IMG/VR virus record: IMGVR_UViG_3300042367_000228
Coordinates: 186,001-250,000 of that record
DNA length: 64,000 nucleotides
Strand: one strand, 5' to 3'
In this document: piece by piece, positions 8,471 to 57,039 of the stretch
Numbering within the stretch: the stretch's first letter is position 1
How the letters are laid out: each line of letters starts with the position of its first letter
Program-made: the position numbers and the translations under genes
The notes under the pieces: model-generated
Databases searched by the model: none
The model's input: only the letters and a program-made list of their open reading frames with translations
What the model was told of the DNA's origin: nothing

Positions 8471-8531
8471 AGTAGCACCTCGTAGTTATTATAAAGTAGT
8501 ATAATAACATAATTGTGCAAATATTACAATA

Positions 8532-8861: not shown

Positions 8862-8880
8862 AAAATCTCCTTTCCCATAT

Positions 8881-9168: not shown

Positions 9169-9250
9169 ACAGTATTTACGTTAAGATTATAAAATTTATT
9201 TGATAAATACCGTATCAAACAACATTCTCACAAAAGGGGTGACACGTAAT

Positions 9251-36799: not shown

Positions 36800-37579
36800 T
36801 TAAATAGTAATGTATTGTAACTTAAACTTATCATGCATGTGTTCTCCAGGATATCCTCTAGAATTGTTTAGCATAACACATTCGTTAACAATTGGTGTTT
36901 TTGGATCGTGTTGATGTCCAAAGAAAGCATAATCAAAATTAGTTAATAAATGATCTAAATTAGATCCAAACAACCCATTCATAATAGGATCATTTTTATA
37001 ATGATCAGCAGTTGTTTGCATCGATGGTGAATGATGAGTAATTAAAATATTGTTGTCATAACCAGCCTTGTCAACATGTTCCACCCATTTAACAAAGTGT
37101 TTATGACGTGCAAGTATGTCGGGTACACTAACACGAGCTTCGCCATTAAAAATAACTCGATAGTCATTTATTAATGTAGGTGCGCGTATTAATGTAAATG
37201 GATCTTCATTATTATAATCAGTCCATAATGTACCGCCTACAAACAAGTTATTATCGATGACTATATAGTCACCGTTGAGAATATGAAAGTTTTCGTATGG
37301 AAGTAATTCTTTCAATGTATCTATTGCTTCGTCAATCGACGAACCATAATATTCATGATTTCCCATAACCATAAGCACATGCTTAAACTTATCAGTAACA
37401 GTATCAAAGAAATTTGTAATATCGTCACCATCACTTGTTCTAGTTGATTCTGTAATTCTTTTAAATCTTGATACATTAAGTATATCTCCAGCTAAAATTA
37501 GCACATCTGCAGGTTCAATATCGTCTAAGATTAATGGTTCAAATTCAAAATGTAAATCTGATGCATAAGCAATTTTCAT
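36800..37579 (-). CDS. Calcineurin-like metallophosphoesterase
   Basis: SDLH, AGD, GNHE, THH, GHQH motifs. Confidence 0.88.
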   Translation of the reverse strand: MKIAYASDLHFEFEPLILDDIEPADVLILAGDILNVSRFKRITESTRTSDGDDITNFFDTVTDKFKHVLMVMGNHEYYGSSIDEAIDTLKELLPYENFHILNGDYIVIDNNLFVGGTLWTDYNNEDPFTLIRAPTLINDYRVIFNGEARVSVPDILARHKHFVKWVEHVDKAGYDNNILITHHSPSMQTTADHYKNDPIMNGLFGSNLDHLLTNFDYAFFGHQHDPKTPIVNECVMLNNSRGYPGEHMHDKFKLQYITI

Positions 37580-38206: not shown

Positions 38207-38737
38207 TCAAACTTTATTTAGCTCTTTTACTTGTGCAATCATATCATTTAATAACACTGGTCTATAGTCATGATGCTCAACACAAACATTAACATATCTA
38301 GGATCAGGAACATCACCGTCCATTACTAGGTTACTATGCAAATGACCATGTAGCTGTCCGCTCCATCTATTCAGTTCACTTGGGTGAATTGGAATATGAC
38401 TCATTAACACATTTTGTTGAACATGGTATGCTCTAATATCTCTAAAGTAAGGAGTATACTCATTAAGTCTAAAGATATCGTGGTTGCCTTTGATAAGAAC
38501 CATATCTTTACAATGTAATCTTGCTAACGTTGACAACGCTCTGCGATTAATTGCAACATCACCAAGAATGTACAATTTGTCAGTTGGTTTAACAGTTTCG
38601 TTGAACCGTTTAATAAGTTCTTCATCCATCTCTTCGTAGTTATCCCACGGACGAACTGGTTTACCAGTTGATGATATAAATTTACAAATTCCAACGTGTC
38701 CAAAGTGAGGATCAGACGTTACCCATACATCTTGCAT
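38207..38737 (-). CDS. Metallophosphoesterase
   Basis: SDPHFGH, LGD, GNHD, SHIP, HGHLH. Confidence 0.85.
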   Translation of the reverse strand: MQDVWVTSDPHFGHVGICKFISSTGKPVRPWDNYEEMDEELIKRFNETVKPTDKLYILGDVAINRRALSTLARLHCKDMVLIKGNHDIFRLNEYTPYFRDIRAYHVQQNVLMSHIPIHPSELNRWSGQLHGHLHSNLVMDGDVPDPRYVNVCVEHHDYRPVLLNDMIAQVKELNKV

Positions 38738-38745
38738 TAGTTCTC

Positions 38746-39207
38746 CTATACATGCCAAATTTCAGCAAAGCCTTCTTCTTCAGATGGCATTTGAAAAATA
38801 CTAGTCATCGATGCAATAACTGCATCGGATATGTTTTTGCCTGGACGACTTGCTAATCGTCTTGTAAGTTCATCAGGGTCTGGTGTAGAAAATACTACAG
38901 CAATCTTTTTATAACATAGAAACAGTTTTAACTTGTTAGCTCGCGACTTAACTGTTAAATTAGTTTGATCCCATATTGCATCGGTTTCTGCCACATTTGT
39001 AGTGATTGCTCGTTTGTTTAATAGTTGAGTTGCAGTTTTAACATAATCATCAAAAACTTCATTGTATGTTTTTCCAACTGACACTGCATACTCCTCTATA
39101 AACTTGTCTGAGCTAAGATACACACAATTCTTAGCCCAACTTTGATTGTTAACCCATGTAGACTTACCTGAACCAGGTACACCTACTAACATATAAAGTG
39201 TATTCAT
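38746..39207 (-). CDS. Polynucleotide kinase-like P-loop protein (AAA_33)
   Basis: GVPGSGKST, SSD, DQTNL, RxxxR lid. Confidence 0.8.
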   Translation of the reverse strand: MNTLYMLVGVPGSGKSTWVNNQSWAKNCVYLSSDKFIEEYAVSVGKTYNEVFDDYVKTATQLLNKRAITTNVAETDAIWDQTNLTVKSRANKLKLFLCYKKIAVVFSTPDPDELTRRLASRPGKNISDAVIASMTSIFQMPSEEEGFAEIWHV

Positions 39208-41142: not shown

Positions 41143-42555
41143 TTAGACCGCGTAGCGATCGTTCATAATTGTTTGTAACATAATTGCTTGTGGAGTAAAG
41201 TCATCCATATCAGCTGCAAGTACACTTGTCATAATACTTGGACTAAATCCACTTACTAATGCTGCACCTTTTGCATTATACTTAACTGGCACATTGTCAT
41301 GTGAGTTTAAGTTCCAAAATACAACTTGTGGTACTGTATACCCTGCATCTTCATACTTACGACGAATCATTTTTATTGCAGAATCATCATGTGTTACACA
41401 AGCATCAAATTGCATATCAGATAATATTAAAAGTATCTGTGGCATTTCTTCAACAGGTACATTACCATTAACTGCAACTTCTAAAATCTTAGAAAAAGCT
41501 GCATGTAAGTTAGTGCCCATTTGCCAATCACTTTTTGACATCTGCGCATACTTCTCAACTATATTACCTTTTAGTGTAACTAACTCTGGTTTAGAGCTAA
41601 ATGTTAAGAATGTGTCTTTAAACTTACCAGCATTTTTATCTGCTAAGTATATTCCTAAAGATAATGAAACATCCATACATGTAACAGTTTTGCTTTTACC
41701 TGCAGGACAGCCCATAGAACCTGATACATCAACTAATGGTAAAATACTTGCATCACCGACATAGTTAGGTAACGCGTCCCATTGTGCAATAATGTGTTGT
41801 TTTTCAAGTAGTGATGGTTGAGACCACCAACCACCTAACCCCTTAACAATTTCATATGGATAGATCGCACCTGCGTTAACTTTAACAGTTGGATCATCAC
41901 CTTTAACTAATTTAGCAATGTATTCAGCATACTTATCAGTGTGACGAGCAAATGCTTTTTTGTAGCGTGAAGAAGCTACAGATGGAACATGGCTAAAGTT
42001 AATAGCGTCCCATTGGTTAGCACACATTTGTGTTTCAACTACTTTAGTAAGTGAAACAAGTGTTTTGCGATAACGTTTTGGAGACCAACCTAAGTAGTTA
42101 CGTAATTGTACAGCAGTATCTCCTTTACGTGGAATCCATTTAGCAGCAAGTCCATTTTGCGCTTCTAATGCATCTTTAATTAATCCAAATGCATAGTCCT
42201 TTAAGTTTTGTGTTTTGAACACAAGTAAGTCATCGTAGCGACCGAGTTCAGGAACTTTAGCTGCAAGTTTTTTAGCAGCATCTGGATCTGAGTTTTCAAG
42301 ATGTAATAAAATATCTCTAAACAACTGACGTTCACCTGCACCGCCACGTACATCACGTACCCAAGCTGCAATACGTAATGCAAGATCTCTATCTTCTACA
42401 TAAGCAGCAACAAACTCTGGGGTGATGTTTTTCCCACGTGATGCACCTGCCTTAAAGAAGAGATCAACTAATGCACTTGAGGTTGATTTACGTGCTTTCA
42501 TACCGTTTTCAGTACGTGCTTCTTGATTTGCTATTGCTTCAATAAATGTTGACAT
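41143..42555 (-). CDS. TROVE/vWA-domain protein (Ro60/Rsr-like, DUF2828-type)
   Basis: N-terminal TENG..VDLFF..RDVRGGAGER..GRYDDL..AAKWIPR helical region; C-terminal vWA with MIDAS DVSGS, T (MGTN) and SDMQFD. Confidence 0.8.
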   Translation of the reverse strand: MSTFIEAIANQEARTENGMKARKSTSSALVDLFFKAGASRGKNITPEFVAAYVEDRDLALRIAAWVRDVRGGAGERQLFRDILLHLENSDPDAAKKLAAKVPELGRYDDLLVFKTQNLKDYAFGLIKDALEAQNGLAAKWIPRKGDTAVQLRNYLGWSPKRYRKTLVSLTKVVETQMCANQWDAINFSHVPSVASSRYKKAFARHTDKYAEYIAKLVKGDDPTVKVNAGAIYPYEIVKGLGGWWSQPSLLEKQHIIAQWDALPNYVGDASILPLVDVSGSMGCPAGKSKTVTCMDVSLSLGIYLADKNAGKFKDTFLTFSSKPELVTLKGNIVEKYAQMSKSDWQMGTNLHAAFSKILEVAVNGNVPVEEMPQILLILSDMQFDACVTHDDSAIKMIRRKYEDAGYTVPQVVFWNLNSHDNVPVKYNAKGAALVSGFSPSIMTSVLAADMDDFTPQAIMLQTIMNDRYAV

Positions 42556-42566
42556 ATTATTCTCCT

Positions 42567-42601
42567 CAGTTTATGTTGTGTTTTGTGCTGTTAATAAACT
42601 T
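42567..42601 (-). promoter_or_regulatory. Payload-less Y-like stem element in the 5' UTR of the TROVE gene
   Basis: AGTTTAT-TA-ACAGCAC..ATAAACTG directly followed by AGGAG RBS and ATG. Confidence 0.6.
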
Positions 42602-42617
42602 ATTGTTTATGCTGTGT

Positions 42618-42645
42618 ATTATACACTAAAAAAAGTATTTGTCAA
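42618..42645 (-). promoter_or_regulatory. sigma70-type promoter of TROVE gene
   Basis: TTGACA-16 nt-TATAAT. Confidence 0.8.
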
Positions 42646-43140: not shown

Positions 43141-43749
43141 TTAACCAACTTTCATTACAAAGTTGATTATAAATCTATTTTTATTAAATCTTGGATTTGA
43201 TGAAGCATGAAATCTATCTGATTCAAAAATTACTGCTCTGTTTCGTTTAGGTGTGACACGTTGATTAAGTGTTAATTGGGTTGGTGGTTGTCCACTAACT
43301 GGATCCCAGAATTCATTAAACAAGAATGTATCGCCGTCTGAATCGTTTACATAGTAAATCATACTGTAATGAGATCCAGTTTTATCATCAGTATGTGGAA
43401 AATTATAATGATCAGCTGATGCATTTGATTGTTTTAATAATAAGTTAACTTTAACTCGATCAACAGAACAAATATCTTTTTCAACGTGTTCACCTGCAGT
43501 AAATACTACTGCTTTAAGTCTTTCAAAATAATCTTTAAACTTAGATTCTTCAGTATATGACGAATTTAATAATGTACAAACAAACTGTCCATAGTCTTCA
43601 CAATTGTCATCTATAACAAATGATACATCACCGTATTGATCAGCTGATGATGTTTTTTCTTTGTATTTGTACATTAATTCAGTTTCAAGTTCATACTGAA
43701 TTTGATTAGCATACATTATTGGTAAAAAATTATCAATTACTTTAATCAT
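43141..43749 (-). CDS. 2OG-Fe(II) oxygenase-like protein
   Basis: PHTD..YYVNDSDGDT..PKRNR...F....FHAS....RFIIN. Confidence 0.75.
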   Translation of the reverse strand: MIKVIDNFLPIMYANQIQYELETELMYKYKEKTSSADQYGDVSFVIDDNCEDYGQFVCTLLNSSYTEESKFKDYFERLKAVVFTAGEHVEKDICSVDRVKVNLLLKQSNASADHYNFPHTDDKTGSHYSMIYYVNDSDGDTFLFNEFWDPVSGQPPTQLTLNQRVTPKRNRAVIFESDRFHASSNPRFNKNRFIINFVMKVG

Positions 43750-44024
43750 TAACCGGTACGTTGAATTAAATGCCAACCAAACTGAGTTTGTACTGGTTTA
43801 CTAAAGTTACCAATGCCTAACGAAAATGCTGCTTCTTCAAATGGTTGAACCATTTGTCCTCGACCAAATGCGCCTAAGTTTCCACCACTTTGACCACTTG
43901 GACATTTACTATTGGTTAATGCTAACGCACCGAAATCTGCACCTTCGTTAACAATTTTATTGTATAAGTCATTTGCTTGTTCTTCAGTTTCTACTAAAAT
44001 GTGTTTTGCTTGAATTGATGTCAT
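43749..44024 (-). CDS. ppiC: Parvulin-type peptidyl-prolyl isomerase
   Basis: AKHILV, SKCPSG..GG.LG.F.RGQMV.PFE.AAF, PVQTQFGWHLI. Confidence 0.92.
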   Translation of the reverse strand: MTSIQAKHILVETEEQANDLYNKIVNEGADFGALALTNSKCPSGQSGGNLGAFGRGQMVQPFEEAAFSLGIGNFSKPVQTQFGWHLIQRTG

Positions 44025-44684: not shown

Positions 44685-45437
44685 ATGAATCTATTATTTT
44701 GTCAATGCTGTAATGCATCTTTTATTCCAAAAGCAGGATCTCTTGGAAAGTTTTGTTCTTTATCATGCTCGTCTCGGCATAATAACAAACTTAGTACTGA
44801 AAAGAAAATTTCTAAATACATGTTAAATCCTCTAGCATGCAACTGTTGTAATAAATCGTTAGCATATGAAAAACGTAAAAATAAATTTTGTTCTAATCGA
44901 TGCGCTGCTATAGTTTCTAATAAGGTTGAACGAAAACGTGGACCAACACCTAAAGAAAAACTACTATATTCAAAAGTAAAATTTTATTTATGTACACATA
45001 CTAACAAGTGGTATGTAAATCGAAATCCTAACGGTACTGTGCGTCGTTCATCGCCATATATTAAATCCGAAAAAGAAAAATATTACGCTGCATCAAGATT
45101 TAAATTTAACGTGTATCACTTTCCTAACGAGTTTAATTTGTCTTTAATCGAAACTCACGGGTGGTATACGTGCCCAGGTAAAAAACGATCAACCTTCCCT
45201 AAAAACTTATTAGGTGTAAGCAGAGATCACATTATATCAGTTAGCTACGGATTTGCAAATAATATCGATCCTGCTATTATATCGCATCCTGCTAATTGTA
45301 GAATTGTTCTACAATCAGATAATAAGAAAAAACATTCTACTTGTGATATAACTTTATCTGAACTATTACAAAAAATTATTATATGGGATCAAAAATACAG
45401 TGAGCGACGTACCGGGCTCGAACCGGTCTTGTTCTAA
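44685..45437 (+). CDS. Free-standing HNH-family endonuclease with N-terminal Zn fingers
   Basis: KFCSxxC repeats; SRDHIISV..HPANCRI...DN.KK; TATAAATA directly upstream; 3' end overlaps tRNA-Gly antisense. Confidence 0.7.
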   Translation: MNLLFCQCCNASFIPKAGSLGKFCSLSCSSRHNNKLSTEKKISKYMLNPLACNCCNKSLAYEKRKNKFCSNRCAAIVSNKVERKRGPTPKEKLLYSKVKFYLCTHTNKWYVNRNPNGTVRRSSPYIKSEKEKYYAASRFKFNVYHFPNEFNLSLIETHGWYTCPGKKRSTFPKNLLGVSRDHIISVSYGFANNIDPAIISHPANCRIVLQSDNKKKHSTCDITLSELLQKIIIWDQKYSERRTGLEPVLF

Positions 45438-45476
45438 CTTGGAAGGATAGTGCCATACCTACTAGGCGAACGTCGC
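45403..45476 (-). tRNA. tRNA-Gly(UCC), CCA not encoded
   Basis: Acceptor GCGACGT/ACGTCGC, loop CT-TCC-AA, T arm ACCGG-TTCGAGC-CCGGT; one mismatch in anticodon stem. Confidence 0.8.
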
Positions 45477-45501
45477 TCACTGTACTCTTTTTCTAAAATA
45501 A

Positions 45502-45557
45502 CTGGATGCATTTTAAATTTCATGGAAAGAAAGTTTAAAGTTGCAGTTAGCATCCAA
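45502..45557 (-). ncRNA. Y-like RNA carrying a Gly(UCC)-like anticodon stem-loop
   Basis: TTGGATGC-TA-ACTGCAA..GCATCCAG; TTTC-TTTCCAT-GAAA. Confidence 0.65.
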
Positions 45558-45581
45558 AACTGTTGTATGCAAATACTATAA

Positions 45582-45632
45582 CTGAATGCATTAAATTCAC
45601 CATTGAAAGTAATAATTGCTGTTAGCATTCAA
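45582..45632 (-). ncRNA. Y-like RNA carrying a Glu(UUC)-like anticodon stem-loop
   Basis: TTGAATGC-TA-ACAGCAA..GCATTCAG; TTATTA-CTTTCAA-TGGTGA (weak, GU-rich stem). Confidence 0.62.
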
Positions 45633-45657
45633 AAACTATAGTATTCGCGTACTATGT

Positions 45658-45734
45658 TGGTCGGGATAACACGATTCGAACATGCGACCTGACCGCCCCA
45701 AACGGCCCGCTCTACCAAACTGAGCTACATCCCG
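45658..45734 (-). tRNA. tRNA-Pro(UGG)
   Basis: Full cloverleaf CGGGATG..TT-TGG-GG..TATCCCG-A-CCA. Confidence 0.92.
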
Positions 45735-45770
45735 GTAATTTGTTTAAACTGTTGTTTAACTAATGCGTGT

Positions 45771-45798
45771 ATTATACATTGTTTTATGTATTTGTCAA
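45771..45798 (-). promoter_or_regulatory. sigma70-type promoter for tRNA-Pro / Y-like RNAs / tRNA-Gly
   Basis: TTGACA-16 nt-TATAAT. Confidence 0.75.
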
Positions 45799-45822
45799 CT
45801 ATTAATTAAACCTTTTTGTATT

Positions 45823-45907
45823 TGGAGCCAGGTAGGAGACTCGAACTCCTGATGGGTTTCCCCGACGGATTACAAATCCGTTGCAATGGCCACTATGCGA
45901 ACCTGGC
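45823..45907 (-). tRNA. tRNA-Thr(UGU) with long variable arm
   Basis: GCCAGGT/ACCTGGC-T-CCA; ACGGA-TTTGTAA-TCCGT; variable arm GGG-GAAA-CCC. Confidence 0.8.
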
Positions 45908-46011
45908 AAATATAACTATTACTAAAACACTTGATATTTAGTGCTTTAGTAATAGCTATCATTTAAAAATGACAACTACTACACTTTCGTTAATGGAGAA
46001 AGTTTTCTGTT

Positions 46012-46315
46012 GTTTAATGGTGTGCTTTTACGCTAAAGACCTGTCTGCGACATCCTAATTAACTCTCGGACATGTTAAGTTTAACTATTAGGAAAAACAT
46101 CCTTAACATTAGGGGGTACCTCCCTCATCCGTTTAATATAGCAATCACTTTAGACTCGTAACAGCCATTAAGGCATATTGCCGGACTCTATATTAACGCA
46201 GTTACATACACTTACAGGTTGCTTTCGCACTGCCGTAAGTTTAAGTATCACTTTAGCAAAGTTTGCGGGTCACTCTTTAAATGATGGCTGCTTATAAGCC
46301 TACATCCCAATAAAC
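46012..46315 (-). ncRNA. 23S rRNA L11-binding domain (H43/H44) mimic with ~238-nt insertion
   Basis: GGATGTAGGCTTATAAGCAGCCATCATTTAAAGAGT ... GCGTAAAAGCACAC closed by GTTTATTGG/CCATTAAAC. Confidence 0.75.
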
Positions 46316-46639
46316 TTATGTTAATGCAATCAATCTATCAATGTTTTGTTCCATTAATAGCTTGATTCTATCTTTATCAAAATTGTTATTTTGTAAACAG
46401 TTTTGATGTTGTAATCTAAACAAAGTTTCTTTTGCTTCGTCATATATTGATAATGCCCATATCTGCGTACCACAAAACCCACTTGCAGCTAACTTGATCA
46501 TTTGCCATCCGTCACCTTTGATAAACGAATGTTTTCGTTCAAGTTCAGGACCAACATATTTTCTTAGAAACTCATGTGTATCTGATATTCTATTTTCATA
46601 GTCTTCATTATACATTACATTTCCATATATTACTAACAT
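46316..46639 (-). CDS. Hypothetical protein
   Basis: 107-aa ORF with AAGG RBS. Confidence 0.6.
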   Translation of the reverse strand: MLVIYGNVMYNEDYENRISDTHEFLRKYVGPELERKHSFIKGDGWQMIKLAASGFCGTQIWALSIYDEAKETLFRLQHQNCLQNNNFDKDRIKLLMEQNIDRLIALT

Positions 46640-46693
46640 TAGAAACCTTTGTTTAAATTGTTAAATGGGGTAACTGCCTTTACGGTAGCATCC

Positions 46694-47344
46694 TTATTTG
46701 TTATATGTTATTTTTCTACCTTTATACCATCCTTCTGGAATATTAGTAGTTTTAGGAATGGATTTATTTTCAATTCCGTTTGTAATCCACATTTTACCAT
46801 ATTGAGAATTTTTATTTCCTTTTTGATGAATAGAACTTTTTTCACCAATAAGTTTCTTAGTATGTTCAGAATGTGTTTTACCATTAAATGTACCAGACCT
46901 ACCTTTTAATGAATCTGATATTTTTTTAGATATTAACGCAGCAAAAACTGGATCTTCTTTTTTGCGATTTTCAAGAGTAATTTTCCCTCGTGCAAAGTTA
47001 TCTTTTACATTAGAAGTATATCCATTATTTCCATACAAATTCTTTTTATTGTTGTTTATATAATCAAAGCCGCCACGACCGCCTATTTTAATATTATAAG
47101 TTCTAGTACTAGCAACAAATGATTCGTTTACTATTTCAGCTTCTTTATCATACATTTCTTTTGAATTATTAAAAACATGCAATATTTGTTTACTAAACTT
47201 TTCAATACCGTATTTTATTTTAGCTCGATTTAAAATCTTACCTGATCCCATATAATCATCATTTATGTCTAATGTTTTATGACAACCTATATAGATTTTA
47301 TTATTAATGATATTTGTAATTTTGTATATTATGTAATAAGTCAT
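46694..47344 (-). CDS. GIY-YIG homing endonuclease (Seg-like) with NUMOD3
   Basis: YIIYKITN.INNKIYIG.H..Y.GSG; TYN.K.GG.GG; GKTHSEHTK. Confidence 0.85.
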   Translation of the reverse strand: MTYYIIYKITNIINNKIYIGCHKTLDINDDYMGSGKILNRAKIKYGIEKFSKQILHVFNNSKEMYDKEAEIVNESFVASTRTYNIKIGGRGGFDYINNNKKNLYGNNGYTSNVKDNFARGKITLENRKKEDPVFAALISKKISDSLKGRSGTFNGKTHSEHTKKLIGEKSSIHQKGNKNSQYGKMWITNGIENKSIPKTTNIPEGWYKGRKITYNK

Positions 47345-47457
47345 GCATTTAGTGTTAGTAAGGTGTTAACACCTTACTAATCCAATTATTCTTTTAGGAT
47401 AATGATTTAACGTGCGGAACTTTTATAAAGCATCCTAAACCACACAAACATACTAAT

Positions 47458-47532
47458 TGGCGTCGCTACGGGGAATTGAACCCCGGTTGCAAGGATGAAA
47501 ACCTTGTGTCCTAACCACTAGACGATAGCGAC
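47458..47532 (-). tRNA. tRNA-Glu(UUC)
   Basis: GTCGCTA/TAGCGAC-G-CCA; CAAGG-TTTTCAT-CCTTG. Confidence 0.92.
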
Positions 47533-47538
47533 ATATAT

Positions 47539-47622
47539 TGGTGGAGATCCCTGGATTCGAACCAGGTGCCCAGAGGGCATGGATTTACAGTCCACTGCAG
47601 TCGCCAATGCCGCTCGACCTCC
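47539..47622 (-). tRNA. tRNA-Tyr(GUA)
   Basis: GGAGGTC/GATCTCC-A-CCA; GTGGA-CTGTAAA-TCCAT; long variable arm. Confidence 0.9.
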
Positions 47623-47634
47623 GACGTTCTTTAT

Positions 47635-47868
47635 TTATACAAGTTCTGCATGATTAGTTGTAGTTGTGACTAAATCTAACACACCTATTTTTTTAGCACG
47701 ATTTTCTAAAAGTACAATTCTGTTACGAATTTTATTTTTATCACGTCCACGACCTGCTTTTTCAAGTGCTGTCTTAGCTTGAGCTAAGTTTAGCAATTTA
47801 AGTCTAGGTCTGCCATTACGTGTTACTTTTGGATCTGCAGTTCTATTTGCTTTACTGATGTTCGCCAT
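47635..47868 (-). CDS. Small basic hypothetical protein
   Basis: AAGGA RBS; Arg/Lys rich. Confidence 0.6.
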   Translation of the reverse strand: MANISKANRTADPKVTRNGRPRLKLLNLAQAKTALEKAGRGRDKNKIRNRIVLLENRAKKIGVLDLVTTTTNHAELV

Positions 47869-48034
47869 CTTGTGTTCCTTTATCTAAATTTTCGTTATTA
47901 GCATGACTGCCGTGTGAGTTTGAAATGATTTCTGTTTTGGGTTCTTCTTTCTTACCAAAAATCTTATCCCAGTTATCATCAAACTGAGATTTGCTAACGC
48001 TTAATGGTCTTGCTCTACTGCCTTTACCTGCCAT
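47852..48034 (-). CDS. Small conserved phage hypothetical protein
   Basis: MAGKGSRARP..FDDNWDKIF; AGGAG RBS. Confidence 0.65.
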   Translation of the reverse strand: MAGKGSRARPLSVSKSQFDDNWDKIFGKKEEPKTEIISNSHGSHANNENLDKGTQDGEHQ

Positions 48035-48050
48035 AATAATCTCCTTTTGT

Positions 48051-48154
48051 TATATTAGAACACACTACAATAACGGAGTCGAACCGTATACTAAATTGCG
48101 ATTTAGTAGTGAACCGCACTACGTTGATCAGACGCTGTAGTATGCTTTAATATA
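48051..48154 (-). ncRNA. tRNA-like RNA on a long closing stem
   Basis: Three hairpins including T-arm ACGG-TTCGACT-CCGT inside a ~20-bp terminal helix; no CCA. Confidence 0.5.
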
Positions 48155-48164
48155 ACAACTTTAA

Positions 48165-48250
48165 CAGAATAGCTTGCTCACCATTGAGCATTATCGCTAA
48201 GATAGCAATAATGGAATCGAACCATTAAATAATTTGCTGTGACTATTCTA
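48165..48250 (-). ncRNA. YrlA-like RNA (permuted tRNA domain)
   Basis: TAGAATAG-TC-ACAGCAA; T arm ATGG-TTCGATT-CCAT; closed acceptor TATTGCTA/TAGCGATA; D arm GCTC-AATGGT-GAGC; CTATTCTG. Confidence 0.8.
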
Positions 48251-48257
48251 AAATTAA

Positions 48258-48317
48258 CAGGATAGAATTTACTTTTAGATTAAGAGTCCAATGTAAATTG
48301 TTGCTGTTACTATCCTA
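48258..48317 (-). ncRNA. Y-like RNA carrying a Lys(CUU) anticodon stem-loop
   Basis: TAGGATAG-TA-ACAGCAA; AATTTAC/GTAAATT; TTGGA-CTCTTAA-TCTAA; CTATCCTG. Confidence 0.72.
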
Positions 48318-48323
48318 AAACTG

Positions 48324-48536
48324 TTAAGTCCAAACCAATCTTGCTATTGTAGCTTGCTTTGGATCTTTAAATTGAAATATTATTATGTGAGTAGTGTCTG
48401 TTCGTCCACAATGATATTTATAATCAACTTCGTGTACTAAATTGCGTTCCTTGCACCATTTTGATATTTCAAATGCTCTTTTTACATCCCCTGTAAATGT
48501 AGCAAATCCTTCTGCATGTGCGTAATCTGTATTCAT
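48324..48536 (-). CDS. Small hypothetical protein (C-terminal F..L.W family)
   Basis: AAGG RBS; ends FKDPKQATIARLVWT. Confidence 0.6.
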   Translation of the reverse strand: MNTDYAHAEGFATFTGDVKRAFEISKWCKERNLVHEVDYKYHCGRTDTTHIIIFQFKDPKQATIARLVWT

Positions 48537-48555
48537 AGTTACCTTATGTGTTTAT

Positions 48556-48679
48556 CAGAATGCATTTTATTTACCAGTGCGTCTACTCTTTCGCCAAATG
48601 CAATATTGCATTGCAGGACTTGCACCTGCACATCGTTAGATACCGGTTTCCATTAAATTATGATGCAGTTAGCATTCTA
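48556..48679 (-). ncRNA. YrlA-like RNA (permuted class II/Leu-like tRNA domain)
   Basis: TAGAATGC-TA-ACTGCAT; ACCGG/CTGGT stem; short variable hairpin; GCAGG-TGCAAGT-CCTGC; AATGCAA/TTGCATT; GGCGAAAGAGTAGACGC D arm; GCATTCTG. Confidence 0.8.
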
Positions 48680-48686
48680 AATATAG

Positions 48687-48805
48687 CAGGATCCGTTTAA
48701 TATACGCGCTCTAACCGTTAAGCTAACTGTTATTACTAACAGTGTAGGATTCGAACCTACATCACGTGCTTCAAATGCAAATTATTTTATGCTGTTTAGA
48801 TCCTA
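48687..48805 (-). ncRNA. YrlA-like RNA (permuted tRNA domain)
   Basis: TAGGATCT-AA-ACAGCAT; GTAGG-TTCGAAT-CCTAC; ACTGTTA-GTAA-TAACAGT; TA-GCTT-AACGGTTA-GAGC; GGATCCTG. Confidence 0.82.
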
Positions 48806-48818: not shown

Positions 48819-49061
48819 TTATTAAAAAGAACCTTGTAAAGTTTTGGTTTCATCGAGCTGATGCGGTCAACGTTTTACAGACGCCCTTTACTAGTTCCGC
48901 CAACATGACTACCATAGTAACTAGAATCAAAGCACTGTAATTGCCTGAAACTCTCACTCATTACAACTTGCAGTCTATAACTACCCACTGTGCCCCTTCC
49001 GGAGAACACGTTGTGCTTGCTTGCGCAAAAGTTTTTTCAGTAGTTGGGTTCTTTTTAATAA
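48819..49061 (-). ncRNA. Unknown ~240-nt structured RNA
   Basis: Perfect 15-bp terminal stem TTATTAAAAAGAACC/GGTTCTTTTTAATAA around a GC-richer ORF-free core. Confidence 0.55.
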
Positions 49062-49070: not shown

Positions 49071-49147
49071 CAGGTTCCACATAGTGTTACAAATATGTAC
49101 GGAACATCTTTTCCGCACTTCTGCAATGTATTGCTGTAGGAAACCTA
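49071..49147 (-). ncRNA. Y-like RNA with single-hairpin payload
   Basis: TAGGTTTC-CT-ACAGCAA..GTGCGGAA/TTCCGTAC..GGAACCTG. Confidence 0.68.
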
Positions 49148-49160: not shown

Positions 49161-49215
49161 CAGAATGTATTTTAGTCATATTCAAAAATGATGTTAAGTT
49201 GCTGTTAACATTCTA
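49161..49215 (-). ncRNA. Short Y-like RNA (possible Gln(UUG)-like loop)
   Basis: TAGAATGT-TA-ACAGCAA..TCAT-TTTTGAAT-ATGA..ACATTCTG. Confidence 0.65.
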
Positions 49216-49282: not shown

Positions 49283-49396
49283 CAGGTTTCACAATTTTGA
49301 TCAATTACTCTACCAACTGAGCTAATGTTACAAGTAACATGCAGGAATCGAACCTGCGACACACTGAGATATTAAATTGTTGCTGTAGGAAACCTA
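49283..49396 (-). ncRNA. YrlA-like RNA (permuted tRNA domain, Lys/Asn-like arms)
   Basis: TAGGTTTC-CT-ACAGCAA; TCAGT/ATTGA; GCAGG-TTCGATT-CCTGC; ATGTTAC/GTAACAT; TA-GCTC-AGTTGGTA-GAGT; GAAACCTG. Confidence 0.85.
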
Positions 49397-49407: not shown

Positions 49408-49713
49408 CTAATCTCTTAGGATAGCTAATACTTCATCTTCACGCATAATGATAACTTCATCATCATGTAATTTAATAGGCTCTCCAGCGTGCTTTCCGTA
49501 TAACACTTTATCGCCAATTGCAACTTTTATTTCTCGGAACTGACCATTATCCATATGTTTCCCTGTTCCTATTGCTAGTACTGTTCCAATTACAGATTTC
49601 TCTTTTGAAACAGGTGCAATTAAAATACCACCTTCCGTTATACTTTCTGCAGGATCTTGTCTTACAACAATACGATCGTGCAAAGGAATTACGTTTTCTT
49701 GTGTTACTGCCAT
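49408..49713 (-). CDS. groES: Co-chaperonin GroES
   Basis: PLHDRIVV, TEGGILI, GTVLAIGTG, VAIGDKVLYGK, IMREDEVLAI. Confidence 0.92.
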   Translation of the reverse strand: MAVTQENVIPLHDRIVVRQDPAESITEGGILIAPVSKEKSVIGTVLAIGTGKHMDNGQFREIKVAIGDKVLYGKHAGEPIKLHDDEVIIMREDEVLAILRD

Positions 49714-50424: not shown

Positions 50425-51528
50425 TTACATTTCCTCTTGGGCTAAAAACCATGTACGTGCTACATATTTAACTCTTGTTATTACATCTTTGATTTCTAGA
50501 TGGCTAGCAACAAGTGTATCAGTTTCTTCTTTAACAACATCGTCTGCAATCCATTTTAAGAATACAGGAGTGCTTTTAGGTTCAATACTGATGTTGTTTA
50601 CTTTTAAGTATTCTAAACCTTGAGTAAGTCTAGATTCAGTAACTACTGTATCAGCAAACTCGTTAATGGAGTTAACTTTTTCTACATCAACACTTGCTAG
50701 TGTTTTAACTTTAGATGAACTGTGTTTTTCACCTTTAACTTTAAACATAAATCGTGATTGTTCATAACCAGGAGTAACACATTTCCAAACAATACCTTCA
50801 CCTACACCTTCAACACCAAAGTGTTGAGCAATTGGACATTGTTGTTCTACTGCAACAGTAAGATCCGCAAGCTTGTTTTGCGCAAGCTCAGGTTCGTTAA
50901 AGTTGATATCCATTGTGTATGTTTGGAAGTCATAAATTGTAAATAAATTTTCAGGCCATGCTTCGGTATTAAAACCTGCAATTTCTTTAGCATACGCAAT
51001 AGTATGCTTAAACTCAGTTGGAGTAAAATAAACGCGTTGAACATCTTCGTCTTCATTTTTACCAGCTGACCATGCAACAATGCCAAAGATAATAAACATT
51101 TTAGGAACATTACTAATTCCTACACCTTTTTGAACACCTTGCCCGCACCATTCGCCAAAGATAGAATAATGTGTTAAGTTGTAATCAACTTTGTGATGTG
51201 CAGCTGAAGTTAATAAGTTAATAAACGTTTCTTTATGTTGTTGTGCATATTTTGCCCAACCATAATTGTCATCATCTATTGTTAAAATACGTTCACGTGA
51301 TTGCGCCCAAAATTCATTATATTTAGGAAACTCGCAAGCAACGCTAGCATTAGTGCCATGTGCCTTAACAGAACCTTCAAACGTTAAAGTTGGCATAGGT
51401 GCAAATGGATCAAAGGTTGGTGCACCATTGTCATCTAACCCTTTAAAGGTAGCACGACTTTTAACTTCTCTAACTACTTGTCTAAATTGATTAATGCTGG
51501 GCCATGATTTGTGTACTTGTTTTGACAT
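50425..51528 (-). CDS. RNA ligase, Rnl2 family
   Basis: KAHGTN (motif I), QSR, FGEWCG (III), FG (IIIa), EGIVW (IV), FKVK (V) plus C-terminal Rnl2 domain. Confidence 0.85.
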   Translation of the reverse strand: MSKQVHKSWPSINQFRQVVREVKSRATFKGLDDNGAPTFDPFAPMPTLTFEGSVKAHGTNASVACEFPKYNEFWAQSRERILTIDDDNYGWAKYAQQHKETFINLLTSAAHHKVDYNLTHYSIFGEWCGQGVQKGVGISNVPKMFIIFGIVAWSAGKNEDEDVQRVYFTPTEFKHTIAYAKEIAGFNTEAWPENLFTIYDFQTYTMDINFNEPELAQNKLADLTVAVEQQCPIAQHFGVEGVGEGIVWKCVTPGYEQSRFMFKVKGEKHSSSKVKTLASVDVEKVNSINEFADTVVTESRLTQGLEYLKVNNISIEPKSTPVFLKWIADDVVKEETDTLVASHLEIKDVITRVKYVARTWFLAQEEM

Positions 51529-55421: not shown

Positions 55422-56615
55422 ATGAAAATACAAGAAATTATAAGCGAAGCAATATCAGGTGCTCACTGGATACACGGATTGCACAATGGGTTAAATGATA
55501 TTTTAGAACAACCGTTAGGACTTACATTTAACTTAGAAACTATAAATGGATTTAATGCCATTGCAGTATACCTTAAAGATATGTCCGACGGCAGGATATG
55601 TAGTTTTTATGAGAAAATGCAACCTAGTGATATTATTTACATGTTAGAAGAGATAGTAAAGATAGCACATTATGTTATACAGCAGAAATATGCTAAAGTG
55701 TGCGCGGATGTAAGTGGAACAAACTTTTCTCATATTCAAATTCTACCTCAGTCTAATAATCCAGGAGCCCTCGCCTCGGCTGGTTATGACTATGTAACAT
55801 TCTATGAAACTGATAAGAATGCTTTCCAACATCGAGATATAGATATGCTAAAAGACTTGTTATATAGTACAGAAGCAATGACTGATGTTAACAGAGGATG
55901 GAGTAATGCTGAACAAAAGAATCTATATGTGCCTGTGATAACTGATATGTTTCAAATCGAACCTGCATTTAGAAATTTGAAACTAGGTGATTTTAGTTTA
56001 GCTGAATTCTTCTTAGACACTAAAAACATAGATACTATGGTTCACGAATTAGTACATATTAGACAACACGCACCTCAATCTAGATATAAAACTAAACGAG
56101 TATTTGATAAAGATACTAAACAGCACAAATTGGTTACTAAACAAGGCACTGAATTTAGAAGTAAAGTAGAGCCAAATCAAGAAAAGTTTTATAATGCAAT
56201 TAGAGATTTAGATAAGTCGCCTGAAAACTATAAAATATATAGTTCGTCGTTACAAGAAATACCAGCACATGCGCATGATGCAGCAGTTAGCGTTATACGT
56301 CATTTAGATTTTGCATGGGGCGGTTCGGTTGATGAATATGGCAGAGACGTGTCACATTTAAAATCTCAAGTAAAAGCACTTAAATTGATTATTGCTAATT
56401 TGTCTAATGGACCAACCGCGTTAAAAGATGTTTATGGTCACCCGATTAAAATTAGAAGATTTGAATATTTCAGTAAGACATTTAATCATCCTAACGATAA
56501 AAAGTTATATCCGGTATATAAAAAATTTGTAAAAATAATGAGTCAAGAATTAATCAATTATTACAATTATTGGAATGAAAAACTTATTAACCTTAGTAAA
56601 TCAAATGGTCAATAA
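55422..56615 (+). CDS. Hypothetical protein with HExxH motif and MKIQEIISE leader
   Basis: VHELVHIRQ followed by Y....QEIPAH (zincin-like). Confidence 0.65.
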   Translation: MKIQEIISEAISGAHWIHGLHNGLNDILEQPLGLTFNLETINGFNAIAVYLKDMSDGRICSFYEKMQPSDIIYMLEEIVKIAHYVIQQKYAKVCADVSGTNFSHIQILPQSNNPGALASAGYDYVTFYETDKNAFQHRDIDMLKDLLYSTEAMTDVNRGWSNAEQKNLYVPVITDMFQIEPAFRNLKLGDFSLAEFFLDTKNIDTMVHELVHIRQHAPQSRYKTKRVFDKDTKQHKLVTKQGTEFRSKVEPNQEKFYNAIRDLDKSPENYKIYSSSLQEIPAHAHDAAVSVIRHLDFAWGGSVDEYGRDVSHLKSQVKALKLIIANLSNGPTALKDVYGHPIKIRRFEYFSKTFNHPNDKKLYPVYKKFVKIMSQELINYYNYWNEKLINLSKSNGQ

Positions 56616-56638
56616 AAAAGCTGCCCTAAGGCAGCTTT
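56615..56638. terminator. Intrinsic terminator between tmRNA and convergent CDS
   Basis: AAAAAAGCTGCC-CTAA-GGCAGCTTT. Confidence 0.8.
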
Positions 56639-56641
56639 AGT

Positions 56642-56983
56642 TGTATTTTGGTTAATAAGGCATACATGCCCCAGAGGGGTAGGTTATTAAGCTACCATGT
56701 CAGCTGCTTCCAAAGAGAAGTCAACTGTCATATACTCGAATTTAGATGCTTTTGCGTCTATAAGTTTTGCGCTGTTTAGGACAGTCACCTCACCTGTTGC
56801 CGTCTCCATTATCTCACCAAGTCGAATCCAATTCATCCCCATTATAAAACACACTATCACTTCCCATTTGAGGGGCAGGAAGTCTACGGCTGTTGCCCCA
56901 CTCCGATACCTCTAATGTGTTTTATGGTGGAGATGTGGGGTTTCGAACCCCAGTGTTTGATGCCGTCACTTTGAAGGAATTAC
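56642..56983 (-). ncRNA. ssrA: Permuted two-piece tmRNA
   Basis: Acceptor piece ends GGGGTTCGAAACCCCACATCTCCACCA (56925); coding piece starts GGGGATGAATTGGATTCGAC (56840); G3.U70 pair; tag frame 56755-56687 AKASKFEYMTVDFSLEAADMVA followed by two TAA stops. Confidence 0.88.
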
Positions 56984-57039
56984 AACAATAATAAACACAC
57001 TAAAATATTTAATGTGCTTATTATTGTTAACTTGTGCAT

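What the first reader, a model, noticed from the sequence alone, without database searches (positions are those of the whole stretch)
45502..48317. Y-like RNAs that display bare anticodon stem-loops: candidate decoys for anticodon nucleases
Seen: three short copies enclose a hairpin with a 7-nt loop following the anticodon-loop rule Y-U-NNN-A-N. 48258-48317 has TTGGA-CTCTTAA-TCTAA (Lys CUU). 45502-45557 has TTTC-TTTCCAT-GAAA (Gly UCC). 45582-45632 has TTATTA-CTTTCAA-TGGTGA (Glu UUC, weak stem). 49161-49215 may be a fourth (UUG) but is ambiguous. The phage also encodes intact tRNA-Gly(UCC) and tRNA-Glu(UUC). Known: anti-phage anticodon nucleases such as PrrC and RloC cut tRNA anticodon loops (Lys, Glu, Gln), and isolated stem-loops can be substrates. 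Inference: these RNAs are decoys or sensors for such nucleases, complementing the YrlA-type copies that lack the anticodon.
Basis: partly seen in the sequence, partly recalled or inferred. Interest (0 to 1): 0.85.

Follow-up and report, generated by a model that had tools for sequence, protein, structure and literature searches.

The report
Phage Ro-partner RNAs displaying anticodon loops
A lake-water jumbo phage carries about ten small RNAs that look like partners of a phage Ro60-like protein, and at least two show only a copy of a tRNA anticodon arm, a design shared by well over a hundred uncultured phage contigs that may bait or sense the tRNA-cutting enzymes bacteria use against phages.

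Summary
All the RNAs lie on the minus strand, inside a tRNA cluster. About ten copies share a closing helix, a 5' bulge UAACAGCAA and a 3' tail UGUU.

- **Copy D (48260-48315):** a solid anticodon-arm mimic, with a 5-bp stem and loop CUCUUAA.
- **Copy A (45504-45555):** plausible, with loop UUUCCAU.
- **Copy B:** not supported. Homologues put its "CUUUC" in a stem, and the loop has 6 nt.
- **Copy H:** not an anticodon arm.

The design is not chance. Among 108 unique short homologues from uncultured phages, 57 carry a CU-NNN-AA loop of 7 nt on a stem of at least 4 bp. Shuffled sequences give 1.1. The stems covary. Positions 32, 33, 36, 37 and 38 are fixed, while 34 and 35 vary, with UUU (Lys) dominant.

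Two new facts change the picture. The family is tied to a 470-aa DUF2828/DUF7788 protein (window 41143-42555), whose predicted fold matches Ro60. It also sits beside a polynucleotide-kinase-like gene, phosphoesterases, an RNA ligase and tRNA arrays.

So these are Y-RNA-like partners of a divergent phage Ro protein. The canonical Ro motif (GNCGAA) and the Rfam YrlA threshold are not met. The decoy function is plausible, biased towards known nuclease targets, and untested.

The parts
48260..48315 (-). Short copy D. Closing helix GGAUAG/CUAUCC, bulge UAACAGCAAC, 7-bp inner helix, then an anticodon-arm mimic UUGGA-CUCUUAA-UCUAA (Lys-CUU type).
   Evidence: Fold z = -2.6. A family of 46 aligned homologues shows covarying stem pairs and an invariant C32 U33 .. 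U36 A37 A38.
45504..45555 (-). Short copy A. Closing helix GGAUGC/GCAUCC, bulge UAACUGCAAC, inner helix UUUAAA/UUUAAA, hairpin UUUC-UUUCCAU-GAAA (Gly-UCC-like 7-nt loop).
   Evidence: Fold z = -3.5, 0 of 200 shuffles as good. Close relatives keep the hairpin but read UUUUUAU.
45584..45630 (-). Short copy B. It has the same closing helix and bulge, but its module belongs to the 'UGGUGAA' class. It is not a supported anticodon arm.
   Evidence: z = -0.9 with a 6-nt minimum-energy loop. Class alignment A3 shows only the closing helix as consensus structure.
49163..49213 (-). Short copy H (GAAUGU...ACAUUC). It resembles the copy that lies directly in front of the Ro-like gene in most related phages. 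No anticodon-like loop.
49285..49394 (-). Long copy I. Same closing helix and bulge (UACAGCAAC), with a tRNA-like module of T arm, extra hairpin and D arm in YrlA order.
   Evidence: Rfam YrlA (RF02553) gives 38.9 bits at 49288-49380, below the gathering score of 69. Fold.
48689..48803 (-). Long copy F, with a tRNA-like module.
   Evidence: Rfam YrlA gives 32.3 bits at 48676-48789, below threshold. Fold.
48167..48248 (-). Long copy C, carrying a T-arm-like hairpin (GGUUCGAUUCC) and two further hairpins.
48060..48146 (-). Long copy Z. A divergent closing helix of 9-10 bp that needs G-U pairs, which form only on the minus strand. ACAGC motif and a T-arm-like hairpin.
48558..48677 (-). Long copy E (120 nt), with bulge UAACUGCA and a complex module.
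   Evidence: A weak Rfam tRNA match overlaps it at 48612-48726, 20 bits.
49073..49145 (-). Copy G (73 nt), with bulge UACAGCAA and a module that is an 8-bp hairpin with a 6-nt loop. Not tRNA-like.
41143..42555 (-). Ro60-like protein (470 aa; Pfam DUF2828 + DUF7788; PHROG 850 'RNA-binding protein'). It has an invariant DxSxS MIDAS motif. This is the likely protein partner of the RNAs.
   Evidence: AlphaFold2 model with pLDDT 80 and pTM 0.73. The top five Foldseek PDB matches are all Ro60: 9l5y, 2nvo and 2i91, probability 1.00, TM about 0.5 over the full length.
42562..42645 (-). Promoter-like TTGACA-17-TATAAT (42618-42645), followed by a minimal copy of the motif (GUUUAU-UAACAGCAC-...-AUAAAC, 42569-42599) abutting the Shine-Dalgarno sequence of the Ro-like gene.
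   Evidence: Its position matches the leader copies in 61-62 of 89 related loci. It is not stable on its own.
38746..39207 (-). P-loop kinase (AAA_33), like a polynucleotide kinase.
   Evidence: The same family is in 42 related loci.
38207..38758 (-). Phosphoesterase (PHROG 547), homologous to the calcineurin-like family found in 58 related loci.
36800..37579 (-). Second metallophosphoesterase.
50425..51528 (-). RNA ligase (PF09414; PHROG 548).
45402..47622 (-). Five tRNA genes interleaved with the RNAs: Gly-UCC 45402-45476, Pro-UGG 45658-45734, Thr-UGU 45823-45907, Glu-UUC 47458-47532, Tyr-GUA 47539-47622.

Best explanation
What is shown. The short copies belong to a large, phage-specific family of small RNAs transcribed with tRNA arrays. 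Every member has a covarying closing helix with a conserved 5' bulge (UAACAGCAA) and a 3' tail (UGUU). The part enclosed by the helix is exchangeable. In the long copies it is a YrlA-like T-arm/D-arm domain. In the commonest short class, which includes window copy D, it is a faithful anticodon-arm mimic: a 4-5-bp stem and a 7-nt loop C32-U33-N-N-U36-A37-A38. The family is genomically tied to a protein whose predicted fold is that of Ro60, and to end-healing and sealing enzymes.

What is inferred. The Ro-like protein binds the closing helix and bulge, as Ro60 binds the 5' strand of the Y-RNA stem. This stabilises the RNAs, and through the copy in front of its own ribosome-binding site it regulates its own synthesis. 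The displayed anticodon arm then acts as bait. It looks like the tRNAs that anti-phage anticodon nucleases cut, chiefly tRNA-Lys(UUU), but also Arg-UCU, Lys-CUU, Thr, Ser, Ile, and Cys/Tyr/Trp. It therefore competes with real tRNAs for those nucleases. If it is cut, the neighbouring kinase, phosphoesterase and ligase could reseal it. Changes at positions 34-35 would retarget the bait.

My confidence in the identity part (Ro-like partner RNAs that display an anticodon-arm mimic) is about 0.85. My confidence in the bait/competitor mechanism is about 0.35-0.4.
For: Family and specificity. Only two of those 15 look genuine.

Orientation. For 197 of 197 elements with a tRNA gene within 300 nt, the tRNA is on the same strand.

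Anticodon-arm mimicry. 57 of 108 unique short elements carry CU-NNN-AA on a stem of at least 4 bp, against 1.1 (maximum 4) in 300 dinucleotide shuffles. 75 fit YU-NNN-R-N against 7.7. Stem pairs covary, for example UA 37/CG 8, five pair types at the middle pair, and GC 32/AU 14. Overall 88.9% of cells are paired, against 30-47% when the partner is slid. The loop frame is almost fixed: C32 in 45/46, U33 in 45/46, and U36, A37 and A38 in 46/46. Positions 34 and 35 vary, and A34 never occurs. The loops are the same as those of the phages' own tRNA-Lys genes (72 of 72 read CUUUUAA), and up to 15 nt are identical to real tRNA-Lys arms.

Bias. UUU is shown by 24 of 108 elements, but Lys-UUU makes up only 72 of 2312 tRNA genes.

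Ro link. The DUF2828/DUF7788 protein is in 87 of 194 loci, and a short copy lies 0-50 nt upstream of it in 61-62 of 89. Its fold matches Ro60. GenBank homologues are annotated 'Ro-like RNA binding protein'.

Repair context. Kinase, phosphoesterases and RNA ligase are in the window and across the loci.

Published background. Ro plus a tRNA-like partner has been called an RNA-repair platform in jumbo phages (PMC7824862). YrlA has been suggested as a competitive inhibitor of an anticodon nuclease that cuts Trp, Tyr, Cys and Phe tRNAs at A36/A37 (PMC7790460). Those are the same anticodons shown by a second class here (CUGCAAA, CUGUAAA, AUCCAAA).

Expression. Lake metatranscriptome contigs from related strains (mostly 90-99% identical) cover A+B, C+D, E and G-I, but not the homing-endonuclease gene.
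Against: - No binding, cleavage or rescue data exist. The host and its nucleases are unknown.
- A cleavable bait is a poor inhibitor of a multiple-turnover nuclease unless it is abundant, binds tightly or is resealed. None of this is known.
- The canonical Ro-binding motif GNCGAA is absent, so even the Ro-like/RNA pairing rests on gene linkage.
- The displayed anticodon shows no association, positive or negative, with the tRNA genes in the same locus.
- Variation at positions 34-35 may be relaxed constraint rather than retargeting.
- The homologues are related to one another, so the shuffle statistics overstate independence.
- About 30-45% of short copies, including window B and H, show no anticodon-like loop.
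- The RNA-library contigs do not prove transcription, because DNA carry-over is possible.
Confidence: 0.45

Rival explanations
1. Tether or adaptor. As in the Ro/Y-RNA/PNPase machine, the exchangeable module recruits a partner protein to the Ro-like ring. The anticodon-arm module would recruit an enzyme that recognises anticodon arms: the neighbouring RNA ligase or kinase-phosphatase acting on broken tRNAs, or a tRNA-modifying enzyme such as the t6A or i6A machinery. This would specialise the complex for repair or disposal of damaged tRNAs rather than titrating a nuclease.
For: Y RNAs are known tethers (PMC4201824; PMC12135203). The conserved loop positions U36-A37-A38 and A36-A37-A38 are the ones I recall as determinants for t6A and i6A enzymes (from memory; loop data). 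The repair genes are the conserved neighbours.
Against: It gives no reason for the strong bias to Lys-UUU, or for anticodon changes between near-identical copies. No partner has been identified.
Confidence: 0.25
2. Sentinel or regulator. The anticodon arm is a sacrificial sensor. When a host nuclease cuts it, the RNA no longer gates or sequesters the Ro-like protein. Where the copy is the mRNA leader, cutting changes translation and so switches on the repair programme.
For: A copy of the motif abuts the ribosome-binding site of the Ro-like gene in 61-62 of 89 loci and, in minimal form, in the window. In some loci that leader copy is a D-type anticodon-arm copy, for example L186 and L143. Y RNAs gate access to the Ro cavity (PMC4201824). 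tRNA fragments are known signals for the bacterial Ro/RtcB operon (PMC7790460).
Against: Most leader copies are not anticodon-like, having 9-10-nt loops. Window copies A, B and D are followed by other RNAs, not by a gene.
Confidence: 0.12
3. Processing or punctuation elements with relic hairpins. The closing helix is what matters, as a Ro-like or RNase site that helps mature the long tRNA transcripts. The anticodon-like hairpins are leftovers of tRNA genes with no function of their own.
For: The elements sit within 100 nt of tRNA genes in 179 of 286 cases and always on the same strand. The modules are very diverse, and some have no stable structure.
Against: Relics would decay. Instead the stem covaries, five loop positions are nearly invariant in 46 divergent sequences, and A34 is avoided. 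The rest of the element has no D or T arm remnants, and the anticodon stem is extended by a dedicated inner helix.
Confidence: 0.12
4. Chance hairpins in AT-rich spacer DNA.
For: Copies B and H fold no better than shuffled sequence.
Against: Shuffle controls (57 observed against 1.1), covariation, strict strand bias and conserved gene linkage all argue against it.
Confidence: 0.02

Closest known systems
Bacterial and phage Y RNAs of the YrlA type with Ro60/Rsr (Salmonella rsr-yrlBA-rtcBA, mycobacteriophages, Thermus phage phiLo Yrl1/Yrl2)
   Same: Small RNAs encoded next to, and on the same strand as, a Ro60-fold protein. They have a stem formed by the 5' and 3' ends with a conserved 5'-strand element, plus an exchangeable module. 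The long copies have a T-arm/D-arm domain in YrlA order. They are linked to RNA-repair genes.
   Different: The protein is the DUF2828/DUF7788 branch, which the Pfam TROVE model does not detect. The conserved RNA element is UAACAGCAA, not GNCGAA(N)G or CGAA. There are up to about ten copies per phage, embedded in tRNA arrays. The commonest short class shows an anticodon arm, the very part that YrlA lacks. Rfam scores are below threshold.
T4 tRNA repair against PrrC (Pnkp plus Rnl1), and replacement tRNAs carried by phages
   Same: Same conflict and same kind of neighbours: kinase, phosphoesterase, RNA ligase and phage tRNA genes. tRNA-Lys(UUU) is the main theme (PMC7824862).
   Different: Those are enzymes and functional tRNAs. 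Here an extra RNA shows only the target site and cannot be aminoacylated.
Phage pseudo-ToxI RNA that neutralises the ToxN abortive-infection RNase (from memory)
   Same: A phage-encoded, repeated small RNA that mimics the natural RNA ligand of a host defence RNase.
   Different: Pseudo-ToxI mimics an antitoxin, not the toxin's target. No cognate toxin locus is present here, and the structure differs.
thrS operator and other mRNA leaders that mimic a tRNA anticodon arm (from memory)
   Same: A 7-nt anticodon-like loop on a 5-bp stem used as a protein-binding mimic. In some related loci a D-type copy lies directly in front of the ribosome-binding site of the Ro-like gene.
   Different: Window copies A, B and D are not leaders of any gene. 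The anticodon varies between phages, so no single synthetase would fit.

Membership tests
Y RNA / YrlA (Rfam RF02553; Chen et al. 2014, PMC4201824) | Encoded adjacent to, and on the same strand as, a Ro60 orthologue | tested here: met
   A Ro60-fold protein lies at 41143-42555 (-), 3-7 kb downstream of the array on the same strand. In 61-62 of 89 related loci a copy lies 0-50 nt upstream of it. Caveat: the protein is not detected by Pfam TROVE, so orthology rests on predicted fold.
Y RNA / YrlA | 5' motif GNCGAAN0-1G (CGAA), the proposed Ro-binding element | tested here: not met
   The conserved 5'-strand element is UAACAGCAA (variants UACAGCAA, UAACUGCA). No GNCGAA is present.
Y RNA / YrlA | tRNA-like domain with T and D arms | tested here: not met
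   Not met for the short copies of the finding (A, B, D, H). It is met in form by long copies I, F and C, and 30 of 52 unique long homologues carry a T-loop motif.
Y RNA / YrlA | Rfam gathering score of 69 bits | tested here: not met
   Best scores are 38.9 bits (I) and 32.3 bits (F). There are no matches for the short copies.
Y RNA / YrlA | Physical association with the Ro protein | not testable with these tools
   Needs immunoprecipitation or gel-shift assays.
tRNA anticodon stem-loop mimic | Stem of about 5 bp closing a 7-nt loop, supported by covariation | tested here: met
   Met for D and 45 homologues. Four stem pairs are 100% paired or nearly so, with 2-5 pair types each, and the loop length is constant. 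Copy A is met by fold only. Copy B is not met.
tRNA anticodon stem-loop mimic | Pyrimidine 32, U33, purine 37 and no A34 | tested here: met
   C32 in 45/46, U33 in 45/46, A37 in 46/46, A38 in 46/46, A34 in 0/46. Family-wide, 75 of 108 fit YU-NNN-R-N against 7.7 in shuffles.
Decoy or competitor of anticodon nucleases | Bound or cut by a nuclease, and protects tRNA or phage growth | not testable with these tools
Decoy or competitor of anticodon nucleases | Displayed anticodons match known nuclease targets rather than the general tRNA repertoire | tested here: inconclusive
   Lys-UUU is strongly over-represented: 24 of 108 elements against 72 of 2312 tRNA genes. Arg-UCU, Tyr, Cys and Trp are also shown. 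However, the sequences are related to one another, and U-richness could contribute.
Ro60 / TROVE protein family (for the partner protein) | HEAT-repeat ring plus a vWA domain with a MIDAS motif | tested here: met
   The Foldseek top five are all Ro60 (E from 2e-7 to 3e-5, 511-549 aligned columns), followed by vWA domains. DxSxS is invariant in 60 homologues. Sequence-level TROVE and PDB searches are negative.

The most novel reading that the evidence does not exclude
Phages field a modular Ro-like ribonucleoprotein whose RNA subunit carries a swappable anticodon-arm cassette. It would be a bait that can be retargeted (Lys, Arg, Thr, Ser, Cys, Tyr and others) to capture or absorb whichever anticodon nuclease the host deploys, and it would be kept intact by the adjacent healing and sealing enzymes. 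This would give Ro/Y RNPs a concrete counter-defence function. It would also explain why bacterial YrlA mimics tRNA.
Probability: 0.3. Interest if true: 0.88.

Novelty: new variant of a known kind. Interest (0 to 1): 0.72.

Why it matters
The function of bacterial and phage Ro/Y-RNA particles, and the reason YrlA mimics tRNA, are still open questions. This family gives a sharper handle than YrlA in several ways.

- The RNA shows exactly the site that anti-phage anticodon nucleases attack.
- That site changes between near-identical copies.
- The family sits among tRNA-repair genes.
- It occurs in well over a hundred uncultured phage contigs and in at least one cultured phage of a tractable host, Synechococcus phage BUCT-ZZ01 on S. 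elongatus PCC 7942.

If the bait idea holds, it is a new RNA-based counter-defence. If it fails, the family still defines the RNA partners and likely binding motif of the widespread, uncharacterised DUF2828 'RNA-binding protein' of phages. That protein has 705 GenBank phage records, including Felix O1-like, Listeria P100-like and mycobacteriophages.

Tried and rejected
- **Rfam.** At gathering and at permissive thresholds, nothing matched the short copies. There were only sub-threshold YrlA matches for two long copies.
- **BLAST against GenBank phages.** Neither the region nor copy D matched, except at the homing-endonuclease gene.
- **Pfam TROVE.** No hit in this genome or in five other large contigs that carry the element. 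This first looked like evidence against a Ro link, but the fold search overturned it.
- **Sequence searches of the Ro-like protein against PDB.** Empty for both the single sequence and the profile.
- **A loose whole-genome regular expression.** Too noisy to use. The stricter one showed the family is confined to 45.5-49.4 kb.
- **Pairing between the bulge UAACAG and the 3' tail CUGUUA.** Considered because copy A looks compensatory. Rejected as a general feature because B, E and L009 break it, and such a pseudoknot would have no connecting loops.
- **The conserved TTAACA as a -35 promoter box in leader copies.** Considered and rejected. The would-be -10 is not conserved and the closing helix covaries.
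- **Reading D-type copies as decayed tRNA genes.** Rejected because there are no D or T arm remnants, and a dedicated inner helix is present.
- **Association between the displayed anticodon and tRNA genes in the same locus.** None was found.
- **Other cultured phages.** Felix O1-like wV8, Aeh1 and Vibrio phage D482 carry the protein. The UAACAGCA motif was not found in the wV8 locus. The Aeh1 and D482 loci were only inspected by annotation, and no obvious intergenic RNA lies next to the gene there.
- **The G36-G37 loops of the UGGUGAA class as m1G-type mimics.** Considered, but left as too weak.

Full report
**Where the window comes from**

The window is bases 186001-250000 of a 372,016-bp phage genome from IMG/VR. 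It has direct terminal repeats and 35.6% G+C. Near-identical DNA occurs in many lake-water metagenomes. No close relative is in GenBank.

**Checking the observation**

The RNAs read on the minus strand, like the five tRNA genes among them: Gly-UCC, Pro-UGG, Thr-UGU, Glu-UUC and Tyr-GUA.

Reading the minus strand shows about ten copies of one design between 45.5 and 49.4 kb. Each has:
- a U-rich 5' flank ending in AG
- a 6-8-bp closing helix, usually G[GA]AUNN with its complement
- a conserved bulge, UAACAGCAA, on the 5' strand
- a variable module
- the tail UGUU

A stricter whole-genome scan found no other convincing copy. The exception is a minimal one in front of a gene described below.

Two long copies, I and F, match Rfam's YrlA model at 38.9 and 32.3 bits, well below the gathering score of 69. 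The short copies match nothing in Rfam.

The short copies fold as follows:
- **D:** closing helix, 10-nt bulge, 7-bp inner helix, then UUGGA-CUCUUAA-UCUAA. z = -2.6.
- **A:** the same plan, ending in UUUC-UUUCCAU-GAAA. z = -3.5.
- **B:** folds no better than shuffled sequence. Its best structure has a 6-nt loop.
- **H:** has no stable structure.

**Related sequences**

The two-ended pattern found only 15 places in one genome from each of 185,579 bacterial and archaeal species. Only two of those 15, both metagenome-assembled contigs, have tRNAs or the partner gene beside them. The family is therefore phage-specific and common in uncultured, mostly freshwater, phages.

Because the two-ended pattern ignores the module, the modules it retrieves are an unbiased sample. 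There were 108 unique short elements.
- 57 carry a 7-nt loop CU-NNN-AA on a stem of at least 4 bp. In 300 dinucleotide-preserving shuffles the mean is 1.1 and the maximum 4.

The sequences are related to one another, so these figures overstate independence. The next test does not depend on that.

**Covariation in the D-type class**

Forty-six D-type elements, including window copy D, were aligned (A1).
- The anticodon-like stem covaries. The pair types are UA 37/CG 8/UG 1; AU 24/UA 10/GC 7/GU 3/CG 2; and GC 32/AU 14. The closing A-U pair occurs in 45 of 46.
- 88.9% of cells are paired, against 30-47% when the 3' partner is slid by one to three columns.
- The outer helix covaries as well.

Within the loop, C32 and U33 each occur in 45 of 46, and U36, A37 and A38 in 46 of 46. 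Positions 34 and 35 vary, and A never occurs at 34, as in real tRNAs. Among pairs of elements that differ at three positions or fewer, position 35 is one of the most frequent differences. Some modules are identical apart from the anticodon, reading GAU, UGU or UUU.

The anticodons shown are UUU (24 unique elements), UCU (8), CUU (4-5), UGU (4), GCU (3) and GAU (2).

**Other short classes**

- A second class keeps one stem (UUUCA/UGAAA) and shows CUGCAAA, CUGUAAA, AUCCAAA, AUGCAAA, CUGUUAA or CUGAUAA. These are Cys, Tyr, Trp, Asn and Ile types.
- A third class, to which window copy B belongs, is defined by an invariant UGGUGAA. There 'CUUUUC' pairs with 'GAAAAG', and RNAalifold supports only the closing helix.
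- A-type copies occur only in close relatives, where the loop is UUUUUAU instead of UUUCCAU. The hairpin is kept, but the 'Gly' identity is not.

**Comparison with real tRNAs**

The loops are those of real tRNAs. All 72 tRNA-Lys(UUU) genes in the fetched loci have CUUUUAA. Some real arms share 15 consecutive bases with the mimics.

Lys-UUU is 3% of the 2312 tRNA genes in these loci, but 22% of the short elements. Whether a locus also holds the tRNA with the displayed anticodon is no different from background.

**What surrounds the family**

I clustered the open reading frames of 194 loci. The commonest families were:

| Family | Loci |
|---|---|
| 470-aa protein, Pfam DUF2828 + DUF7788 | 87 |
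| Cys-type (dual-specificity) phosphatase | 59 |
| Calcineurin-like phosphoesterase | 58 |
| AAA_33 kinase | 42 |

In 61-62 of 89 cases a short element lies 0-50 nt upstream of the 470-aa gene on the same strand, with the Shine-Dalgarno sequence straight after the 3' strand of the closing helix. Those leader copies mostly resemble window copy H and have 9-10-nt loops. In a few loci the leader is a D-type copy.

The loci are packed with tRNA genes: 2317 in 169 loci. Of 286 elements with a tRNA in the locus, 179 lie within 100 nt of one. All 197 elements with a tRNA within 300 nt share its strand.

**The same genes in the window**

- The 470-aa gene is at 41143-42555 (-), 64% identical to one from locus L186.
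- It is preceded by a TTGACA-17-TATAAT promoter-like site and a minimal copy of the motif (GUUUAU-UAACAGCAC-...-AUAAAC) next to its Shine-Dalgarno sequence.
- Downstream lie a polynucleotide-kinase-like gene (38746-39207) and two phosphoesterases (38207-38758 and 36800-37579).
- Upstream of the RNA array is an RNA ligase (50425-51528).

**The partner protein**

Pfam TROVE does not detect it, in this genome or in five other large contigs. Sequence searches of the PDB are empty.

An AlphaFold2 model built from 60 homologues has pLDDT 80 and pTM 0.73. Its five best Foldseek matches in the PDB are all Ro60: Thermus phage phiLo Ro60, Deinococcus Rsr and Xenopus Ro60. Each has probability 1.00, TM about 0.5 and 511-549 aligned columns. 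Isolated vWA domains follow. A DxSxS MIDAS motif is invariant.

PHROGs calls the family 'RNA-binding protein'. tblastn finds it in 705 GenBank phage records, some annotated 'Ro-like RNA binding protein'. A full-text search for DUF2828 returned only five papers, none of them about phages or RNA biology by title and abstract.

The closest cultured relative is Synechococcus phage BUCT-ZZ01, at 50% identity. It has three elements in front of the gene, with a variant of the motif (CUGCAGCAA). One is a short copy showing UUUCAA-CUUUUAC-UUGAAA, a Lys-UUU arm.

**Comparison with what is known**

Y RNAs of the YrlA type are defined by three things: location beside a Ro60 orthologue on the same strand, a 5' GNCGAA(N)G motif thought to contact Ro, and a tRNA-like T/D-arm domain (PMC4201824). 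The phiLo phage Ro60 binds two Y-like RNAs encoded upstream of its gene, which have a CGAA motif (PMC12135203). Jumbo phages were noted to carry a ROT/TROVE protein 'with a tRNA-like partner' as an RNA-repair platform (PMC7824862).

The present family shares the logic and the gene linkage. It fails the motif test and the Rfam threshold, and its short members lack the T/D domain. I therefore describe it as working like a Y RNA of a divergent Ro branch, not as a member of YrlA.

I found no description of Y-like RNAs that display an anticodon arm. The idea that YrlA might competitively inhibit an anticodon nuclease has been voiced. That Salmonella nuclease cuts Trp, Tyr, Cys and Phe tRNAs between A36 and A37 (PMC7790460). 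Three of those anticodons are the ones shown by the second class here.

**Mechanism**

Shown: the architecture, the mimicry, the strand and the gene linkage.

Inferred:
- The Ro-like protein binds the helix and bulge.
- The copy at its own ribosome-binding site gives feedback on its synthesis.
- The anticodon arm is bait for anticodon-loop-directed enzymes.

I rank a bait or competitor for anti-phage anticodon nucleases first. The reasons are the Lys-UUU bias, the fixed loop frame with a changing anticodon, and the repair neighbours. A tether for repair or modification enzymes, and a cleavage-sensing switch, remain live rivals. Nothing computed here separates them.

**Expression**

Four lake metatranscriptome runs hold contigs, mostly 90-99% identical to the window, that cover A+B (45496-45660), C+D (48114-48322), E, and G-I. 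They do not cover the homing-endonuclease gene. This is compatible with transcription but does not prove it, because these are assembled contigs and DNA carry-over cannot be excluded.

**Verdict**

The finding is real for D, and for A with less support. It is wrong for B and H. It opens onto a large, apparently undescribed family. The decoy reading is reasonable but unproven.

Noticed in passing
window 48821-49061 (-): A 240-nt non-coding stretch between copies F and G, conserved in close relatives at 83-100% identity. In two RNA libraries the contigs wrap around, running from 49061 back to 48821/48823, at depth up to 180. That is what a circular or head-to-tail RNA would give. In two other runs it is collinear with the genome. 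No Rfam match. Its ends can pair (GAACC...GGUUC).
   Followed up: partly
window 46018-46317 (-): Another conserved non-coding stretch of about 300 nt, between tRNA-Thr and a 107-aa ORF. Part of it (46146-46427) has the highest RNA-contig depth in two of the four runs, at 149-312. No Rfam match. It could be a further structured RNA.
   Followed up: partly
window 46318-47535: The segment holding a 107-aa ORF, a GIY-YIG/NUMOD3 homing endonuclease (46694-47344) and tRNA-Glu is replaced by 164 other bases in contigs of related strains. Most of it, including the endonuclease gene, has no counterpart in close relatives L012, L151 and L165. This is an endonuclease-linked insertion inside the tRNA/Y-like array.
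   Followed up: partly
window 48323-48548: RNA-library contigs of three runs join 48322 directly to 48549, skipping the 70-aa ORF between copies E and D. Relatives L012, L013, L027 and L151 keep the ORF in their DNA. Whether this is a strain difference or removal at the RNA level is not settled.
   Followed up: partly
window 56596-57017 (-): The phage encodes a permuted, two-piece-type tmRNA (Rfam tmRNA_permuted at 102 bits, beta_tmRNA at 90 bits) with tag peptide AKASKFEYMTVDFSLEAADMVA.
   Followed up: no
window 45823-45907 (-): tRNA-Thr(UGU) is 85 nt long, with a long extra arm that is unusual for a Thr tRNA.
   Followed up: no
window 49408-49713, 43749-44024, 43141-43776 (-): A GroES-like co-chaperonin, a parvulin-type prolyl isomerase and a 2OG-Fe(II) oxygenase flank the RNA array.
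   Followed up: no
L214 (Escherichia phage wV8, Felix O1-like), locus 5001-11226: The DUF2828 Ro-like gene is immediately followed by the phage's tRNA array, which contains three entries annotated 'tRNA-OTHER' (pseudo). These could be tRNA-like partner RNAs of that protein. The UAACAGCA motif was not found there.
   Followed up: partly
related loci, e.g. L082:1210-1680, L026:11200-11427: A dual-specificity (Cys-type) phosphatase in 59 loci and a small Rpb6/omega-like protein in 38 loci recur near the Ro-like gene in the uncultured phages. Neither was found in this genome by tblastn.
   Followed up: partly
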